A stretch of DNA of 64,000 nucleotides, taken from Oikopleura dioica (lineage: Eukaryota > Animalia > Chordata). Below the pieces are notes generated by a model. The model was not told the origin of the DNA, searched no databases, and was given only the letters and a program-made list of their open reading frames with translations. How positions within the stretch are numbered: position 1 is the stretch's first letter; each line of letters starts with the position of its first letter. The stretch spans positions 10,230,001 to 10,294,000 of the forward strand of contig OU015568.1 in the NCBI GenBank assembly GCA_907165135.1. Reading direction: 5' to 3'. The translations under genes were made by a program, and so were the position numbers. This document shows positions 23,081-53,500 of the stretch, in pieces.

Positions 23081-23597
23081 CTTTTAGTTTCTTCTCAGTT
23101 AAACTTTTCGAGTTATCTTGGTTTCACGCTCCAACATCGCGCTTATAAACTGGGATGCGCTACATGTGTCGCCCGGAATTGCGCCACCGTACTCGACTGA
23201 TAAGATAAAGGAAAACGTGCAAGGGTGCTGATATCACTATATTATAGAATTAAGGGGAAAGGATTAGAGTAAGATTAAAGTTCGACGGTTTAGACAACAA
23301 ACTTTCACAACGAGTTTTTAAAATACAGTTACCTCCGACAGTTACGCCCTTGTACTAGTGTTACAAGAGTCTTGTTTTTGAAACTGTCGAAGCTTCTTTT
23401 CCTTGGGTGTTTTGAGGAGTTCCCTCTCGTACGAGTAGTTTATCTATTTACGAAGTGATCTTAAATGTCAAATCAGAAGAAATCTCTATTTGAAACTTTT
23501 ATATTCTATTTGCTTTGGTAACAAGTAAGCTCTTCTGCTTGGAATTTAAAGGACACGTGCGAAACATTCTGACAAAAAAAAAGAGAACTTTTTCAAT

Positions 23598-26407
23598 ATG
23601 GGTAGTCGGCTGCGGCTGATATGGGATATTTTCATCGCAGCAGCGATTGTTGGAATTACTTCTTATATCATCTACGATGCTATTGCAGATAATGAAGAGA
23701 AAACTACGACAACGGCAATGCCTACAACAACGACTCTTTCAGATAGTGACTATGCAGATTCAATAAAAGTCTGCACAAATCCGCATGAAAAACTGGAGCA
23801 TCCAGAGAAATATCCCGAAAGTCCGCTGGATGAATACGTTTGGAGAGATGGTTAGATTTTTCAAAAATTTCTACTGAATTTATGTTTTAAGACGGAGCGT
23901 TCAATTTTGAGGTCATGTCAAATGAGGTTGTTTCCACCGCGAACGGTGACATGCAGGTCATAAAAGCCAATTTTACATCTCAACTTTGGCTTCCTGATGA
24001 AGACTGGCATCTAGAAGCTACTGGGAATAAGTATTGGATCCACTGGCTTACAATTTTTGTCCCACTTCCTGATCATAAGTATTATGATGAGCGACTTGTC
24101 AACACAGCTGCTTTACTCGTCGAAGGTGGGAGCAATAAAAAGGGAGAAACAGGTCCACCAGACGGCACCACCCTCGGGACATTTCTAGGCAAGCGATTCG
24201 GTAGGTCACTGAAGCAGTACTAAACTATTAAACTTTTCTTCATAGCGTCGTTTTCTGGAGCTGTCAGCATATCTTTGGAGCAAATACCAAATGGGCGTAT
24301 GCGTTTCAAGGACTGGAATAACGGCAATTCTGGTCTGGGTGGGGACGATCTAATTGGGTACACATGGAGACGATTTTTGGAGACAGGCGGAACTGAGCAC
24401 GAGAGGCTTCTTTTGATGCCGATGGCCAAGGCCGCTGTCCTGGCCTTCAACGCCACTTCAGACATTCTCCAACAAGAGCAATGCGGTCGAATTGGATCAA
24501 AACATCCTTGCAGAAAAGCTCCACTCGAAAAGTACATGCCATGGGGCTACTCAAAGCGAGGATGGACGGCGTGGCTCACTGCTGCTGTAGATTACAAGCG
24601 TGTCGCTGCGGTCAATCCTATCGTGTTGAGCTTTCTGAATATGATTCCCAATTTTCATCATTACTGGCGTGCATTCGGCGGCTGGAGCTTCGCCATGGCT
24701 CCATATTATAAGCAAAATATTACGAAAACGTTGGACGACCCGCTTAACATTGAAGCGGCAAAGATTCTCGACCCATACACGTTTAAGGGGGTGGTGGTCG
24801 AGAATTAAGATTTTTTAAACCATGATTGAGAAAAAACCGAAAGGGACAAGAAAATTTATATTTTCTAGGGTTAAAGATCAACGTTGAAAGAATGTGGGCG
24901 CGTGGAGAAAAAAAAAATTTTTTTTTTGAAAAAGCTGATAAAAATTTTATGAAAGTGGACCCTACTTCAATCCAAGATTACGGGCAAAATAACTTTTTTT
25001 TCAAAGATCAAACCTCATATGATGATAGAATAGACCCTTACGGATGTGGGCGCGTGGAGATTATTTAGTGTATCGCTGTAGAAAAAAAGTTCGTAATTGA
25101 ATCGAAAATGCTGGGAGCCTGAAAAATCGTCATTTTCATTCATTTTAAAATGAAATTTTCGAAAACATAACAGTAATCGTATTTTTTTTAGATTTTTATA
25201 ATTAAAATATGATCCAGAAATATAATCTTGCAGGAAAAAATCAATTTTTAAGTGGTTTTAGTGCGAAAAACGCGTTTTAGAATTTCCGAAAATGGCATTT
25301 TCATAGCATAAAATCGTAAATTTTCTTAAATAAAGTTGGTTTAATAAAAAAAAGCTAGAGACCAAAAATACTCCTTTTTTATCAAGGAATCTGAAAATAA
25401 TAATAGAATTTTAAAAAGTCGAAAAAAATTTTCTCGACCACCACCCCCTTAAAGACAGGCTTATCATGCCTAAGCTTGTAATCTCAGCCGCGGGAGACGA
25501 GTTTTTTATGGCTGACGATACCCACTATTGGCTCAAAGATATGAAAGGGCCAACATACTTTCGACTTCTTCCAAACGCGGAACACGCAACTGTCCTTCAC
25601 AGAAGAAATACAAAAGTTATGTATTTTACGATGCGTCAATTCTACCTGTCGTCAATGCTTGATCTGCCGATGCCAGGTGCGTAAACATCAACAAATAGCT
25701 AAAATGTCTTCGCACTATTAGACTACTGCACAACTCGCTACACACGAAATGATGGAAGGCGTGGTTTGCGAATCCAGACAAATGATGTTCTACGAGGCCT
25801 GGATGCGTTTATTGTCGACTCTCGGGATAAAAGTAGATTTAAAATCTTGACTTCGACTCTAGCTAAAATTTAGAACGCCGAGATTACCGTTTCATCCAGG
25901 TCAGAGAGGGAAGTTTCAAACCATTTGAACTTGAGCAAGACTTTCCCGGTTTCGAGGGTGTCTTTGACAATTACGACTATGAAGGTGGCAAGCAAATAAC
26001 CCTGAAGAATACAAGCCACTATCAATTCGACAGAGACATTGCGGACCAAGAAGAATTCCTGGAATACTCCCTTACCATCAAGGTTATATGAGCTTCATTT
26101 TTCAAACTAAAACCAATTAGGCGAATGTATGGCAACACTATACGCCTCACCAGATTGAAAACTCCGACTACGAATACGACTATTTTATCGAAATGGATCC
26201 TGGAGAGCTTGGCTACAGAGCTTTCCTTTTGAATGCTCAGTTTCAGGTATGCACTTTCCTGATGATACCTTGGTTAATTTGTTTGTTTAGGGTTCTTTCG
26301 ATGCTTATGGATGGTGGGAAACGACTTCCGAAGTCCAGTTCGCTGACATCGACCACGATCCCTTCGAAGACTGCGAAGGAATAAATTGCTACGGAACTCT
26401 TGTGTAA
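23598..26407 (+). CDS. PqaA/AprA-family (PhoPQ-activated pathogenicity-related) alpha/beta-hydrolase-like protein with N-terminal membrane anchor
   Basis: SPLDEYV; FTSQLW; GYSKRGWTAWLTAAVD; DPYTFK|DRLIMPKLVISAAGDEFF; PNAEH; C-terminus CEGINCYGTLV*; several spliceosomal introns. Confidence 0.88.
24787..25448. mobile_element. MITE with TTAA target duplication and GG termini (Kolobok-like), inserted in the PqaA-like coding sequence
   Basis: 18-bp TIR GGGGGTGGTGGTCGAGAA; TTAA at 24783-24786 and 25449-25452; empty site reads TTT AAA GAC AGG (FKDR). Confidence 0.9.
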
Positions 26408-26746
26408 TAAACTTTTATACGAGTCATTTTCGGTTCTCTGGAGATAGGATCGTTTGAGGTTATTACGTTATCAAAATTAAAGACAGAGAAAATTGATGAT
26501 TTTGTTATTTATTAAAAATATCAGTGGGAATATAAGCATTGTCTGGAACTCTGAGACATGTGGGAAGGCAGTTAAATGGAATAAAAATACAGTAAAGGCA
26601 GTTGATGAACGAATGTTTTTTTTCGAACGGAGTTATTTTGGGCTAAGAGGCAATTTTGCGTGTGGCAGTTGAATTCCAACCTAAATTTTTCGTAAAATAT
26701 GGAAAAAGAGTTTTTCTGACCTAATTTTTGGAGCGCCAGAAAAATG

Positions 26747-37753: not shown

Positions 37754-38535
37754 CAGTCGACTCTGGCAATTACGAGTAGCAGAATTACGAGTATTTTGAC
37801 AAAAACCCGCCAATTTTGAAAACAAGGGATCATCGACCGAAAATAATTTTTTTCGAAAAAATTGAGAATGCTTGATTTTAATCATTAACCCGCTAACAGG
37901 GTGGTCGATTTTGCCTACGCTTTTGCCTGTCTGTGATTGAGTGAAAACATGGATCCGGGCATGCGATTGGCTACTCATTTCCACGCGTGGCCGTGAGACG
38001 GCCACGCGCCTGTTACCGGGTTAAATCTTTGGCTTAAGAGTCTCCGGCTCTTCAGATGGTTTTAAAGCAGCTTCAACAGATTGAAAATTTGCATTATTTT
38101 TTTTATGAAAGTCTGTGAATATTATTTTAATTTTTCGTTGACAAAAAACTTTCCAAAGGGGTACGGTAGTAGCTTAGAGCCTTAGCTCTCTCCTGAAAAA
38201 AATTAAGGGTTTCCCTCAGCTTAAATCCCTGAAAAAGCTTGATCCTATCAACCTGATCTTTAACGGCCTGTATATCATTGAGGAGGTAGAACTAGATTTT
38301 TTGAACAACCGTGATTTTCGGGATCATCATAAGGGAAGCGGTTGTAGTCGAGTGTTAAATTCGAGTTCCAATTAAATTAAGGGTGTAAATAAGATAGTTT
38401 CGGAGAAATACTAGCTCCAAGAAGGCCCATTTTCGCAATTTTCGCAAAATCGAGCCAAATTTTCCAACTCGGAGAATTACGAGTATTTCACGAAATTCCC
38501 GACAAAAAAAGGCTCGTAATTGCCAGAGTCGACTG
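37754..38535. mobile_element. 782-bp Tc1/mariner/pogo-type MITE, copy 1
   Basis: 23-bp TIR CAGTCGACTCTGGCAATTACGAG; TA on both flanks. Confidence 0.92.
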
Positions 38536-39730
38536 TACATTATTCTTTTTAAACAAGTAGGTCAAATAAATGACACTGTTCCAAAATGCCTCGCTAATTA
38601 AATATTGCTTTACGAATTTTTACTGATTATATATTATTAATGGATACCTGCTTGATGATTTCTGTTTAGCCAAAATTCCGGGTCGATCATCGCTGAAAAC
38701 ACTTTTCACCTTCATGATTTATGAAAATGAGAATATTAAAGATATTCTCATTTGTTTCTTTACCTTGCGGAACTAAGGCACGTCATCTGCGTTGCCGATC
38801 GACCAGTTTCTGGTGAAGAGCTTCTGCGATTCTTGCAGCAGTTGATTGGTATTCTAGCAGCGCTAGCAACATCGGTCACTGTGTTTTTAAGGAGCGTTTT
38901 CGCTTGGCTCAGTTGACTTTCCTGAACTATTTTGGCTTATTTATGCACGTTTTATCTTCATTTATTAATAAAAAGTATCTCGTTTCGTAATATACGTAAT
39001 AATTCACGATCATTCTTTCAGAAGCCTTTCCTATCTGCTCTGAACCCTCTTTCTTCGACATTCTCTCTCTCTACTTGCTCGTTTTCTGTTAATTACTTTT
39101 CTGGCAATGCCTATCTCTTTGGTTATTCTGGGTCTCCTTTGCGCTTGGAATGGGTATAAATTGAAATGAGTTTATTGACTTGTGTATTGGAAAGTATTTA
39201 CTCGCCTGCGGCAGTAGCGCGAGTGACTGTGGCCGCGGGGGGAACGCTTTCTACACGAGGGGCGGCTGAATATCCGATGAGACGGGGATAACCTTCGCCC
39301 TCCTCGCACTAAGAATACAACATATCCAAAGAGTCAATCGCCAAAAGTGCTTTTGCTCGATTTTAAGCAACGAAAACACAACCCACAGGCCCGCGCGGCT
39401 TTTCGATAAACGATTAGCGGTTAAGCGAAAATAGAAAATAGCGAAGGACGCTAAAAGTAGTATGCAACACGTGGCCAAAGTATTTTTACAAAATGATCGT
39501 TAAGAATCTATGAATCTGTAATTTAGTCCATGACTTGTCCATTCAGCTGGCGTCGTCATTAAATTAGACGATGAAGGGCTGCATGAATGTATTCTTTTCA
39601 TTTCTTGTCTTTGAAAAGGATTTTCCAAATTTCAAAATAAGACCATTTTGTTTCAACAAACTGTATCCCTAAAAAGAATCGTCTCTATCCCAAGTCATCA
39701 AAACCTAGCCTCGGTAGAGCTGATTACGTA

Positions 39731-40512
39731 CAGTCGACTCTGGCAATTACGAGCCTTTTTTTGTCGGGAATTTCGTGAAATACTCGTAATTCTCCGAGTT
39801 GGAAAATTTGGCTCGATTTTGCGAAAATTGCGAAAATGGGCCTTCTTGGAGCTAGTATTTCTCCGAAACTATCTTATTTACACCCTTAATTTAATTGGAA
39901 CTCGAATTTAACACTCGACTACAACCGCTTCCCTTATGATGATCCCGAAAATCACGGTTGTTCAAAAAATCTAGTTCTACCTCCTCAATGATATACAGGC
40001 CGTTAAAGATCAGGTTGATAGGATCAAGCTTTTTCAGGGATTTAAGCTGAGGGAAACCCTTAATTTTTTTCAGGAGAGAGCTAAGGCTCTAAGCTACTAC
40101 CGTACCCCTTTGGAAAGTTTTTTGTCAACGAAAAATTAAAATAATATTCACAGACTTTCATAAAAAAAATAATGCAAATTTTCAATCTGTTGAAGCTGCT
40201 TTAAAACCATCTGAAGAGCCGGAGACTCTTAAGCCAAAGATTTAACCCGGTAACAGGCGCGTGGCCGTCTCACGGCCACGCGTGGAAATGAGTAGCCAAT
40301 CGCATGCCCGGATCCATGTTTTCACTCAATCACAGACAGGCAAAAGCGTAGGCAAAATCGACCACCCTGTTAGCGGGTTAATGATTAAAATCAAGCATTC
40401 TCAATTTTTTCGAAAAAAATTATTTTCGGTCGATGATCCCTTGTTTTCAAAATTGGCGGGTTTTTGTCAAAATACTCGTAATTCTGCTACTCGTAATTGC
40501 CAGAGTCGACTG
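39731..40512. mobile_element. 782-bp Tc1/mariner/pogo-type MITE, copy 2, inverted relative to copy 1
   Basis: Same TIR and TA flanks; internal sequence is the reverse complement of copy 1, and the ORF track gives the same peptides over the element-internal portion on opposite strands. Confidence 0.92.
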
Positions 40513-50527: not shown

Positions 50528-53500
50528 ATGAGCTTGAATACAAACACTAAAAATATTCAAATATTTTTATTTGTGATATTCTTGTGTATTTATTTTGTTG
50601 TAACTGGCTTAAGACAAGAAAAGCTTTATTTTAACTCGGAGAAATATCAAGCTCAAGATGAGACCACAAAAAATGATCATTTGATGTTTTTTATCAACCA
50701 CGGAACTTATCTTCCTCCAAGCAAGGATATAAGGCCCTATGAGATTATTCATTCGCCAAGAGAAAATTACGAGGATGTGGAAATTGTTTTTGGTCTAAAA
50801 ACTGTTTTTAAGGAAGCGATAGTAGAAAAAGCTCGTAACACACAGAGTTGCAAATTTGCTCAGCGGTCGCTCAGCTCAGCTCAGTAGTTTAAGAAAATGA
50901 TCTGATCTTCTCAGTTCAGCTCAGATCAGACAAGTATCACTCAGCTCAGCTCCACTCAATGGTTTTATCAGAATTTTACTACTAAAAATACAGTAAAAAC
51001 AGCTTAGCTGAGTTCACCCAGCTCAGATAAGCTCTTATTAGGGTCTGCTCAGCTCAGCTCAATGACCTCTGAAAAAGGCTAGCTTAGCTCAGAGAATTTT
51101 TCACTCAGATCAGCTCGGCTCAGCCAAGCGAAATGAAGGCAAAATTTGCATCACTGGTAACACAAGAAAATCATTATGTTTCTTCCCAAAGAACTTTTTA
51201 ACTATCACCCACATAAGCATCGAATGAAGAGAGATTCGATAAGAAAATCATTTGGTAATTCCGATTTCTATCGCGAAAAATATAACGTAAAATTCGTGTT
51301 CTTGCTCGGAAAAAGGAGGATGCCCATGAACAGAGTTGCAAACTGCTAGAAATATAATTATCAGATCTTGGCTGTGTATCGCGCTGATCTCTTTGTTAAT
51401 TTTATTAAATAAAATAACTCTTTCGAGGAAAGTGAAATTCTCGCGGAAGAAGAATTGTTCGATGATATCATCTACGGGAGCTTTCAAGACTCGTACTGGA
51501 ATTTAACCTTCAAGGAGAGCATGTTTTACTCTTGGACAAAACAAAACGTGCCCAATGTGAAATTCATTTACCGAGGAGACGATGACAATTTTCTTAATCC
51601 ACTTGGAGTGATGAAATTTCTCGAAAAACATTGGGACGAAGCAAATGCAGAAGCTGCACTTTGGGGTGGAGTTATTCAGGGAATGCCCTCCGTTATTAGC
51701 GACACGACGAAATTAGATGAAATCATGGAGGAAAGAAGGACTGATGTGTAAGTCGCGAAAAAATAAAGCTCAGTTTTGTTTATTCTGTTTTAGATGGCCA
51801 GAAGAAGTATATCCGAAGTATGCATCTGGTTCTGGTCATATTATGAACCGAAATGCTCTCTTCGTTTTGGAAGGACAAATGCAGCTCAATCCGTTGATAT
51901 CTATTGATGATGCTTTTATTGGCATTTGTATGACGAAAGGGTCAAAGGGTTCAAATTTTAGCATTATTAAAAATTCCAAAGTTATCGGAGTGCTTTCTTA
52001 TGACCCCCTTTTAAGCTGGGTTAGAAGATAGAATTTTCGATGTCAATGAATTTCACCCGTGGGGAATCAAGTTTGAAAACGGAAATGATTTTTGCACTAT
52101 TGTTAATGCAATCTCCATTCATTACCCAAAATTTGATTACGAATGCATGCTTTCGAAGATCCTCAAATACGCGGAAAAATGCGAAAAGATGAACTTCACG
52201 AGGCCAGAGATATTTCTTTCAGTTGTCCCTGGTACGAAAGCAAGCTTTCGGCGCCGATTCTTGATGGGCCTTTTTACCAACGCTGCGGGCCTGAGTTCAA
52301 TAACAGTAGATGCAGCACTGACAGGCTCTTGGCTCGACATTCTAGACGGTTTTTGTGGTGAGAACCAATTTTCGCCTCGAGAAATTTGAAACCATTCTTA
52401 TTCATATACAGTCGTTACGCACAATTCCGTAACGCACAATTCCGGACATTTAGGGAAAACGGAAAAATTAAAAACGCACAATTCCGGACAATTCGACAAA
52501 AATTTTAACTGAAATCTTTATTTTACTCGATCATTTTTTTGCAAAAAAACTAAGAATGCTTGCTTGTTTCTTCGGCTTTTCTGGCTTCTGTTGAGGTGCA
52601 ATTTCCATGGCTTCTTCTGGTTGTTCGTCAACATGCTCGCGATCATCTCCAAGATCAAGTTGCGCGAAATCCCGGGCCATAAGCAGCTCTTCTTCCACTT
52701 TTTTGATCTGTTGGCGCTGGAGCTCTTCATCTTCATTCTCGATAGGCGCTTCCGAAATTTATAAGTTTGTAAAGAAAGATATTAAGTTTAAATTATACCT
52801 GATACTTTTGGAATCGAGGAATGCCGGATTTTCGCCAACATGTCCGTATAATGTTGGGAGACATTTCGGAGACGAGCCTGACTGCAGTTTTGACTCCCAA
52901 CTCCAGTCCAGGCGAAGTTTTTTGGTGCTCTTGTCGGAAAGACCGCAGCCATTTTCGGTACTTTCCTTTTATTAGGAGATCGTCAAAATTATATATTTTT
53001 ACATAGTTTTAAATTAATTTATCTTTTAATAATTTTTAACGAAGTATTGACAAACCCCCGCCTTTAAGACAGGCGAAAAATACCTGATCGAGTGGCTGAT
53101 ATGCCCCAGTTGTCCCTGGCTTGAAAAAACCCAGGGCAACGTTCGTAACTCCAAGCGCAGAAGGGTCAACATTCAGATGACCCGAGAAATTGTCAAGGAG
53201 GAGCAAGTTCTTTTGACCCGGTTTTACCCGGGCCAAGAACCGAGAGAATCTCTTAAGGGATCCCCTCCCGATTTGAAAAATATCATCGAGAGCTTTTATG
53301 TGATATATTTTTGGAATCTCCGTTGTCTGGCGATCATTTTCATATATTACGTCAAAGGGAGTCCGTCACGTGGTAAGCCGTGACACAGCTTTGAAAATGG
53401 CTTATTTTAACGAAAAATTTTACTTAGAAAAAATTCGCAATTTTTTCGACTTTTCAAAGTCGACATAATCAGATGAATAAGGGCTCTTAAGAAAGCTCAG

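What the first reader, a model, noticed from the sequence alone, without database searches (positions are those of the whole stretch)
24783..25454. TTAA-targeting, GG-ended MITE that becomes a zero-footprint GG-AG intron in the PqaA-like gene
Seen: the MITE splits the motif DPYTFK-DRLIMPKL, and read-through stops after GVVVEN. Removing 24789-25454 (GGGTGGT...CCCCCTTAAAG) gives TTT AAG GAC AGG = FKDR, exactly the empty-site protein. The element's G-run supplies a GG donor and replaces the exonic bases lost when the second TTAA plus the target AG becomes the acceptor. The GT sites in the TIR give no in-frame join to this acceptor. Known: O. dioica uses GA-AG and GG-AG introns; Kolobok elements have TTAA TSDs and purine-purine termini. 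Inference: a relaxed spliceosome and G-ended MITEs together form a precise intron-gain route.
Basis: partly seen in the sequence, partly recalled or inferred. Interest (0 to 1): 0.88.

Follow-up and report, generated by a model that had tools for sequence, protein, structure and literature searches.

The report
Young TTAA transposon splitting hydrolase exon
A small jumping element has recently landed inside a coding exon of an otherwise intact hydrolase gene of the tunicate Oikopleura dioica; it could be cut out of the RNA exactly as an unusual GG-AG intron, but no RNA could be brought to the junction and the splice signals are poor, so it may simply be a broken allele.

Summary
A 662-bp element with perfect 18-nt inverted ends and a TTAA duplication sits in exon 3 of a 629-codon AprA/PqaA-like (PF10142) gene. 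It adds exactly 666 nt between Lys and Asp of the family motif DPxx(Y/F)(K/R)-(D/E)RLxMPK. Read-through stops six codons into the element.

Removing 24789-25454 (GG...AG) is the only G*-AG pair that restores the protein exactly. The RNA would still differ from the empty site by one synonymous base (AAG versus AAA).

Splicing itself is untested. Three RNA runs laid no read on the whole gene, and the protein and metagenome searches found no same-lineage transcript or empty site.

Two points weaken the intron reading. About 20% of TTAA sites in the window would allow such a removal by chance. The GG donor (AGG|GGGTGG) lacks the context reported for Oikopleura non-canonical donors. It also sits 2 and 5 nt before better GT donors, which frameshift with this acceptor.

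My odds: disrupted or poorly rescued young insertion allele 0.5; precise newborn GG-AG intron 0.35; other in-frame splicing or artefact for the rest.

Transposon-born non-canonical introns are already published for the larvacean Fritillaria. This scan has noted several similar TTAA-element-in-exon cases elsewhere in this genome, none with RNA proof.

The parts
23598..26407 (+). Host gene: membrane-anchored AprA/PqaA-like hydrolase (PF10142). It has 629 codons if the element is removed. Exons: 23598-23850, 23892-24200, 24246-24788 | 25455-25676, 25722-25832, 25874-26082, 26121-26246, 26291-26407.
   Evidence: Pfam hits on the exon pieces. tblastn of homologues along the locus as far as the C-terminal motif. 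The two halves were translated apart and both are open. The six other introns are GT-AG and 38-45 nt long.
24783..24786 (.). Left copy of the TTAA target-site duplication.
   Evidence: The bases outside the 4-bp repeat differ on both sides.
24787..25448 (.). 662-bp non-autonomous DNA transposon (MITE), 30% G+C. It has no long ORF, no Rfam match and no other copy in the window.
   Evidence: In DNA run X25 the summed contig depth over the element is about 5-25 times that of the flanks. At least 11 contigs begin to match at 24782/24783 and carry unrelated sequence before that.
24787..24804 (+). 5' terminal inverted repeat (a G-run followed by three GT dinucleotides).
   Evidence: 100% complementary to 25431-25448.
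25431..25448 (+). 3' terminal inverted repeat. On the gene's strand it reads as a C-rich pyrimidine tract.
25449..25452 (.). Right copy of the TTAA target-site duplication.
24789..25454 (+). Hypothetical 666-nt GG-AG intron: donor AGG|GGGTGG, acceptor CCTTAAAG|ACA. Not shown at RNA level.
   Evidence: It is the only G*-AG pair that restores the protein. No RNA read lay on it.
24791..24798 (+). Three competing canonical GT donors (24791, 24794, 24797). All are out of frame with the acceptor at 25454.
   Evidence: The base-pairing count against the U1 consensus was done by hand.

Best explanation
A non-autonomous, TTAA-targeting cut-and-paste transposon with GG/CC termini (Kolobok-like) has recently inserted into the third coding exon of an otherwise intact AprA/PqaA-like hydrolase gene of Oikopleura dioica.

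Shown: the insertion adds exactly 666 nt between the Lys and Asp codons of a conserved motif. The unspliced frame stops six codons into the element. The family is multi-copy in another individual's DNA.

Inferred: this copy is a young, probably segregating insertion allele. Its transcript is truncated, mis-spliced from the nearby GT donors (frameshift), or at best only partly rescued by the exact GG-AG removal. It is raw material for an intron, not an established one.
For: - Youth: the inverted ends and the TTAA duplication are perfect.
- Exact 666-nt addition at a place where the homologues run on without a gap or extra residue; four metagenomic relatives read straight through it as one ORF.
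- Read-through stops after GVVVEN.
- The exact-restoring donor is AGG|GGGTGG. It lacks the exonic AG and the +3 A reported for Oikopleura GA-AG donors (PMC7072748).
- GT donors 2, 5 and 8 nt downstream can pair with U1 over 6-7 contiguous positions (counted by hand) and frameshift with the same acceptor.
- The intron would be 666 nt, against 38-45 nt for the gene's six other introns.
- Both splice sites lie in or next to a 23-bp perfect RNA helix.
- About 20% of TTAA sites would allow such a removal by chance.
- The one X25 contig that reaches the left junction stops matching at the last A of the TTAA, 4 letters before its own end, and does not run into the inverted end. This weakly suggests an allele without the element.
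- Unchecked scan notes report several paralogues of this gene family and several segregating TTAA elements in exons of this genome.
Against: - The gene is otherwise fully open with all family motifs. For so young an insertion this says little.
- The acceptor (pyrimidine-rich end + TTAAAG) resembles the gene's own acceptors such as TTTTAAG and TTTAG.
- The A-to-G change left by the GG-AG removal is synonymous.
- Oikopleura tolerates non-GT donors in 11-12% of its introns (PMC8008620).
- Transposon-born non-canonical introns are real in the related Fritillaria borealis (Henriet 2019, as summarised in PMC11282704).
- The scan keeps finding removable elements in exons of this genome.
- The RNA runs gave no test either way.
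Confidence: 0.5

Rival explanations
1. One reading: the element is removed precisely as a GG-AG intron (24789-25454). The G-run of the inverted end supplies the donor, and the second TTAA plus the target's AG supplies the acceptor. The gene stays functional, and this would be a newborn intron.
For: - It is the only pair that restores the protein exactly, and the one-base change is synonymous.
- The C-rich inverted end gives a pyrimidine tract before TTAAAG, which is like the gene's own acceptors.
- The place holds no intron in relatives L001/L002 and L004/L005; a third, L003, has one 2 nt away.
- Non-GT/AG introns are common in this species (PMC8008620, PMC7072748).
- There is a precedent in Fritillaria (PMC11282704) and in introners whose duplication builds a splice site (Huff 2016, cited in PMC13326754).
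- Unchecked scan notes report several similar cases in this genome.
Against: - No RNA evidence.
- The donor context is poor and sits among alternative G and GT cleavage sites that all frameshift.
- The length is 15 times the gene's other introns.
- The 23-bp helix covers the donor and the pyrimidine tract.
- The chance of compatibility is about 20%, and the cases were picked by a reader who was looking for compatibility.
Confidence: 0.35
2. The element is spliced out through other sites that keep the frame but delete a few conserved residues. Examples: GT 24781 to AG 25458 (loses FKDR), or GT 24791/24794/24797 to AG 25474 (replaces DRLIMPK). The result would be an altered protein.
For: These are canonical GT-AG pairs and they keep an open frame.
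Against: - They remove the most conserved motif of this region.
- The downstream AGs lie in exon sequence with no pyrimidine tract.
- No RNA evidence.
Confidence: 0.08
3. Assembly artefact: a repeat copy was wrongly placed into the exon.
For: The family is multi-copy, and no X25 contig bridges either junction.
Against: The exact TTAA duplication, and an addition of exactly 662 + 4 nt at a codon boundary of a conserved motif, are the signature of a real transposition and not of a mis-join.
Confidence: 0.03

Closest known systems
MITE-derived non-canonical introns of Fritillaria borealis (Henriet et al. 2019, Curr Biol 29:3193; read here only through PMC11282704 and PMC13326754)
   Same: Both are in larvacean tunicates that have lost the minor spliceosome. 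In both, a small DNA transposon with inverted ends and a target-site duplication lies at a species-specific place in coding sequence. In both, exonic target bases help to form the 3' splice site and the intron ends are non-GT.
   Different: There the ends are mostly AG-AC or AG-AT, the introns are the majority in the genome, and removal by the U2 spliceosome was shown. Here the ends would be GG-AG, the target is TTAA, it is a single young copy, and no RNA evidence exists.
Introners of Micromonas and Aureococcus (Huff, Zilberman and Roy 2016, Nature 538:533; cited in PMC13326754) and other introners (PMC9860276)
   Same: A non-autonomous DNA transposon carries one splice site and uses its target-site duplication to build the other, so removal can be exact.
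   Different: Those use canonical GT-AG, exist in hundreds to thousands of copies, and are shown to be spliced. PMC9860276 does not mention tunicates.
Kolobok superfamily and its T2-MITEs (PMC6004289)
   Same: TTAA target-site duplication, purine-purine (RR) terminal bases, terminal inverted repeats, and non-autonomous multi-copy derivatives.
   Different: The Xenopus elements begin AGGRR or AG, whereas this one begins GGGGG. No transposase with matching ends was seen, so the superfamily assignment rests on the ends alone.
Non-canonical G*-AG introns of Oikopleura dioica (PMC8008620; PMC7072748; that GG-AG occurs there is from my memory of Denoeud et al. 2010, which could not be opened)
   Same: G at +1, AG at the 3' end, and a U2-type spliceosome that tolerates a non-T at +2.
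   Different: Reported GA-AG donors have exonic AG before them and A at +3, and the species' introns are about 49 nt at the median. Here the context is GG|GGG and the length is 666 nt.
piggyBac elements
   Same: TTAA target-site duplication.
   Different: From my own knowledge, piggyBac termini are CC...GG. Here they are GG...CC. A piggyBac-like foldback with CCC...GGG ends does lie elsewhere in the window (37885-40384).

Membership tests
Kolobok-type non-autonomous DNA transposon (MITE) | 4-bp TTAA target-site duplication | tested here: met
   TTAA at 24783-86 and 25449-52, with the bases outside differing. Removing 662 + 4 nt restores the family motif with no gap.
Kolobok-type non-autonomous DNA transposon (MITE) | Terminal inverted repeats that begin with two purines (RR; PMC6004289) | tested here: met
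   18-nt perfect inverted repeats that begin GG.
Kolobok-type non-autonomous DNA transposon (MITE) | Multi-copy, with copies at unrelated sites | tested here: met
   In X25 the depth over the element is 5-25 times that of the flanks. At least 11 contigs start to match at 24782/83 with unrelated sequence before that. There is no second copy in the window.
Kolobok-type non-autonomous DNA transposon (MITE) | An autonomous partner that encodes a Kolobok DDE transposase and has the same ends | not tested
   None in the window.
Transposon-born spliceosomal intron (introner; Fritillaria type) | The element sits in coding sequence at a place where relatives have no intron | tested here: met
   L001/L002 and L004/L005 read through the place without an intron, and the homologues align with no gap. 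Caveat: L003 has a GT intron 2 nt away.
Transposon-born spliceosomal intron (introner; Fritillaria type) | The ends plus the target-site duplication give splice sites that allow exact removal | tested here: met
   GG 24789 with AG 25453-54 restores the protein and leaves one synonymous base change. The chance expectation is about 20% of TTAA sites.
Transposon-born spliceosomal intron (introner; Fritillaria type) | The element is removed from the RNA | tested here: inconclusive
   Three oligo-dT RNA runs laid 0 reads on 23300-26700. No RNA run holds the stretch. No junction was found in metagenome contigs.
Transposon-born spliceosomal intron (introner; Fritillaria type) | Many copies of the same family serve as introns in different genes | not testable with these tools
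   The genome outside the window was not available. Only unchecked scan notes speak of other cases, and those concern other families.
Oikopleura non-canonical G*-AG intron | G at +1 and AG at the 3' end | tested here: met
Oikopleura non-canonical G*-AG intron | Compensating donor context: exonic AG before the donor and A at +3 (reported for GA-AG in PMC7072748) | tested here: not met
   The context is AGG|GGGTGG. The register that does have AAG| before it frameshifts or ends in AA.
Oikopleura non-canonical G*-AG intron | Short length (median 49 nt, PMC8008620) | tested here: not met
   666 nt, against 38-45 nt for the gene's six other introns. Long introns do exist in the species, so this is not disqualifying.
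PhoPQ_related / AprA-like hydrolase (PF10142), the host gene | Pfam match above the curated cut-off over the domain | tested here: met
   Exon pieces score 24.8, 133.8 and 48.8 bits against a cut-off of 20.3, and the profile positions are colinear. The animal homologues are named autocrine proliferation repressor A-like.

The most novel reading that the evidence does not exclude
G-run-ended, TTAA-targeting MITEs are a working intron-gain system in a chordate. Wherever such an element lands at TTAAG or TTAAAG in an exon, the permissive Oikopleura U2 spliceosome would remove it exactly as a GG-AG intron. These families would then be a main source of the species' GG-AG introns and of its fast intron turnover.
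Probability: 0.3. Interest if true: 0.75.

Novelty: new member of a known kind. Interest (0 to 1): 0.45.

Why it matters
How new introns arise is a long-standing question, and Oikopleura is the animal with the most extreme intron turnover. A young, datable transposon copy in an exon would let one watch intron birth in a chordate. The one-base difference (AAG versus AAA) separates a spliced transcript from an empty allele, so the test is direct. It would also link the species' non-canonical GG-AG introns to a specific transposon chemistry. If the copy is not spliced, it is an ordinary loss-of-function insertion allele. As it stands, the general idea is already published for Fritillaria and for algal introners, and this locus adds a candidate, not a proof.

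Tried and rejected
- RNA reads: none of the listed RNA runs holds the stretch. The three bulk oligo-dT runs laid 0 reads at 90% likeness on 3.4 kb that covers the whole gene. That is no test.
- DNA run X25: its contigs are too short to bridge either junction, and no joint was reported.
- Same-lineage transcript or public gene model: the search of 1.84 billion representatives found nothing closer than 47% over full length. The word-indexed search with the 180-residue piece found only metagenomic relatives at 59% or less. A profile search was swamped by other animals' AprA-like proteins. A second profile built from the window's pieces collapsed and found only its first row, so that search was wasted.
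- Metagenome scans for the junction (with R at the diagnostic base) and for TTAA plus the inverted end both gave 0 hits.
- Rfam on the element gave nothing meaningful. There is no second copy in the window.
- Denoeud 2010 and Henriet 2019 could not be opened. What I say of them comes from secondary sources or from memory.
- A neighbouring single-exon gene, which could have brought in the public annotation of the locus, was looked for and not found.
- Rules followed: the host gene is an endogenous animal hydrolase, not a toxin or injected effector.

Full report
**What is there.** The sequence at 24783-25452 is a 662-bp AT-rich (30% G+C) element bounded by TTAA on both sides. Its ends are perfectly complementary over 18 nt, or 23 nt with the TTAA and one more base. 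The 22-nt TTAA+end pattern occurs only at these two places in the 64-kb window, and none of 100 shuffles gave two matches. The 4-bp repeat cannot be extended in either direction, so it is a true TTAA target-site duplication. The element has no Rfam match and no meaningful ORF.

In DNA run X25, which carries the same species label, the summed contig depth over the element is about 5-25 times that of the flanks. At least 11 contigs begin to match at 24782/24783 and carry unrelated sequence before that. So it is a multi-copy family whose copies all start at a TTAA. A TTAA target with purine-purine termini fits Kolobok-type elements (PMC6004289). From my own knowledge it does not fit piggyBac (CC...GG). 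No transposase with these ends was seen, so the assignment rests on the ends alone.

**The host gene.** On the + strand I could build a complete model. The exons are 23598-23850, 23892-24200, 24246-24788, then after the element 25455-25676, 25722-25832, 25874-26082, 26121-26246 and 26291-26407. The two halves, translated apart, give 368 and 261 residues. There is no other stop or frameshift, and the family's C-terminal motif is present.

Pfam PF10142 (PhoPQ_related) matches the exon pieces colinearly. The animal homologues are named autocrine proliferation repressor A-like and include Ciona, amphioxus and molluscs. It is an ordinary animal hydrolase gene with an N-terminal membrane anchor, not a toxin or effector. 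The six other introns are all GT-AG and 38-45 nt long, with acceptors such as TTTTAAG, TTTAG and ATTAG.

**The insertion is exact.** The upstream piece ends ...DPYTFK and the downstream piece starts DRLIMPKL. The homologues read DPxx(Y/F)(K/R)-(D/E)RLTMPK with no gap. In the alignment the two pieces abut column to column, and the Pfam profile positions run on across the break. Unspliced, the frame stops after GVVVEN.

Three marine-metagenome gene versions, 59-71% identical and with larvacean-like tiny introns, bear on the site:
- L001/L002 read through this place without an intron.
- L004/L005 also read through it, but need a 59-nt GA-AG intron seven codons upstream to stay in frame.
- L003 has a GT... 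intron that starts 2 nt from the equivalent place, and the contig ends 32 nt later.

So this stretch of the gene gains introns readily among relatives. No relative carries an intron exactly at the element's position, although L003 has one 2 nt away.

**The splice arithmetic.** I listed every G*-AG pair around the element that keeps the frame open. There are 41, and only 24789-25454 (GG-AG, 666 nt) gives the unchanged protein. The RNA would read AAG where the empty site reads AAA. The footprint is therefore one synonymous base, which conveniently tells a spliced transcript from an empty allele.

With it they add 2, 5 or 8 nt. They join in frame only to AG 25474 or 25501, which destroys the DRLIMPK motif.

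**How good are the signals?** The acceptor is plausible. The C-rich inverted end is a pyrimidine tract, and TTAAAG resembles the gene's own acceptors.

The donor is weak. The required register is AGG|GGGTGG, whereas Oikopleura GA-AG donors are reported to have a conserved exonic AG before them and A at +3 (PMC7072748). The register that does have AAG before it frameshifts. By my hand count against the U1 consensus, the GT donors 2 and 5 nt downstream pair over 6-7 contiguous positions, against 5 scattered ones for the GG donor.

Two more points count against easy splicing. The intron would be 15 times longer than any other in the gene. In the folded pre-mRNA the two ends form a perfect 23-bp helix that covers the donor and the pyrimidine tract. 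Co-transcriptional U1 binding could still precede formation of that helix (inference).

**How surprising is the compatibility?** For an element GGGGG...CCCCC with a TTAA duplication, same-length GG-AG removal is possible whenever the base after the target is G, or the next two bases are AG. In this window 13.5% + 6.4%, about 20%, of TTAA sites on both strands qualify. The case was also picked by a reader who was looking for compatibility. The arithmetic alone therefore carries little weight.

**RNA and population evidence.**
- No RNA run in the index holds the stretch.
- Three 2026 oligo-dT RNA runs with the same species label laid no read at 90% likeness anywhere on 23300-26700. Either the gene is silent there or the runs come from another cryptic lineage. 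It is no test.
- X25 gave no bridging contig and no joint. Its one contig that reaches the left junction stops matching at the last A of the TTAA, 4 letters before its own end. A filled site should have let it run about 30 nt into the inverted end. This weakly hints at an allele without the element (inference).
- The protein collections hold no same-lineage product of this gene.
- Metagenome scans for the junction and for the element's end were blank.

**Comparison with what is known.**
- Transposon-born introns whose target-site duplication helps to build a splice site are established in algae (Huff 2016).
- With non-canonical ends they are established in the larvacean Fritillaria borealis (Henriet 2019, read through PMC11282704 and PMC13326754).
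- Oikopleura dioica has 11-12% non-GT/AG introns (PMC8008620), with GA-AG the commonest (PMC7072748).
- The papers I could search do not describe TTAA-element-derived GG-AG introns in Oikopleura.
- Other notes of this scan, all unchecked, report several TTAA or hAT elements in exons of this same genome. Some are segregating, one is inside an older intron, and none has RNA proof. They also report several paralogues of this hydrolase family.

**Verdict.** The structure is real and described correctly. The claim that it is an intron is not shown.

Against the intron reading stand the poor donor, the competing GT sites, the length, the helix and the 20% chance level. For it stand a permissive spliceosome, a good acceptor, the synonymous footprint and the Fritillaria precedent.

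My odds are:
- 0.5: a young, probably segregating insertion allele that is disrupted or only partly rescued.
- 0.35: efficient precise GG-AG removal.
- About 0.1: other in-frame splicing or artefact.

One RT-PCR on genotyped carriers would settle it.

Noticed in passing
window 37885-40384: A foldback element of about 2.5 kb. Its arms are perfectly complementary over about 656 nt, it is flanked by TTAA on both sides, and its termini are CCC...GGG (piggyBac-like). It is a different family from the GG-ended MITEs.
   Followed up: no
Pfam finds nothing in those ORFs. A 29-nt inverted copy of the right flank lies at 53176-53204, so the locus looks rearranged and not like a clean split gene.
   Followed up: partly
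L003:780-854: A metagenomic relative of the host gene (59% identical) has a GT... intron that starts 2 nt from the place equivalent to the MITE site (TAC AG|GTAGGG). The contig ends 32 nt later, so the origin of that intron is unknown.
   Followed up: partly
L004:387-445 (same in L005): Another relative needs a 59-nt GA-AG segment (AAG|GAGAGG...GAAAAG|AGT) removed to keep the conserved frame. It lies seven codons upstream of the MITE-equivalent place. This is a non-canonical intron inferred from frame alone.
   Followed up: partly
window 23598-23850: The host AprA-like protein begins with a hydrophobic anchor and a Thr-rich stretch instead of the usual signal peptide. The relative in L001 has the same layout.
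   Followed up: no
window 24892-24908 and 25044-25060: A 17-nt exact direct repeat inside the MITE, 152 nt apart. The surrounding sequence is not repeated, so its meaning is unknown.
   Followed up: partly
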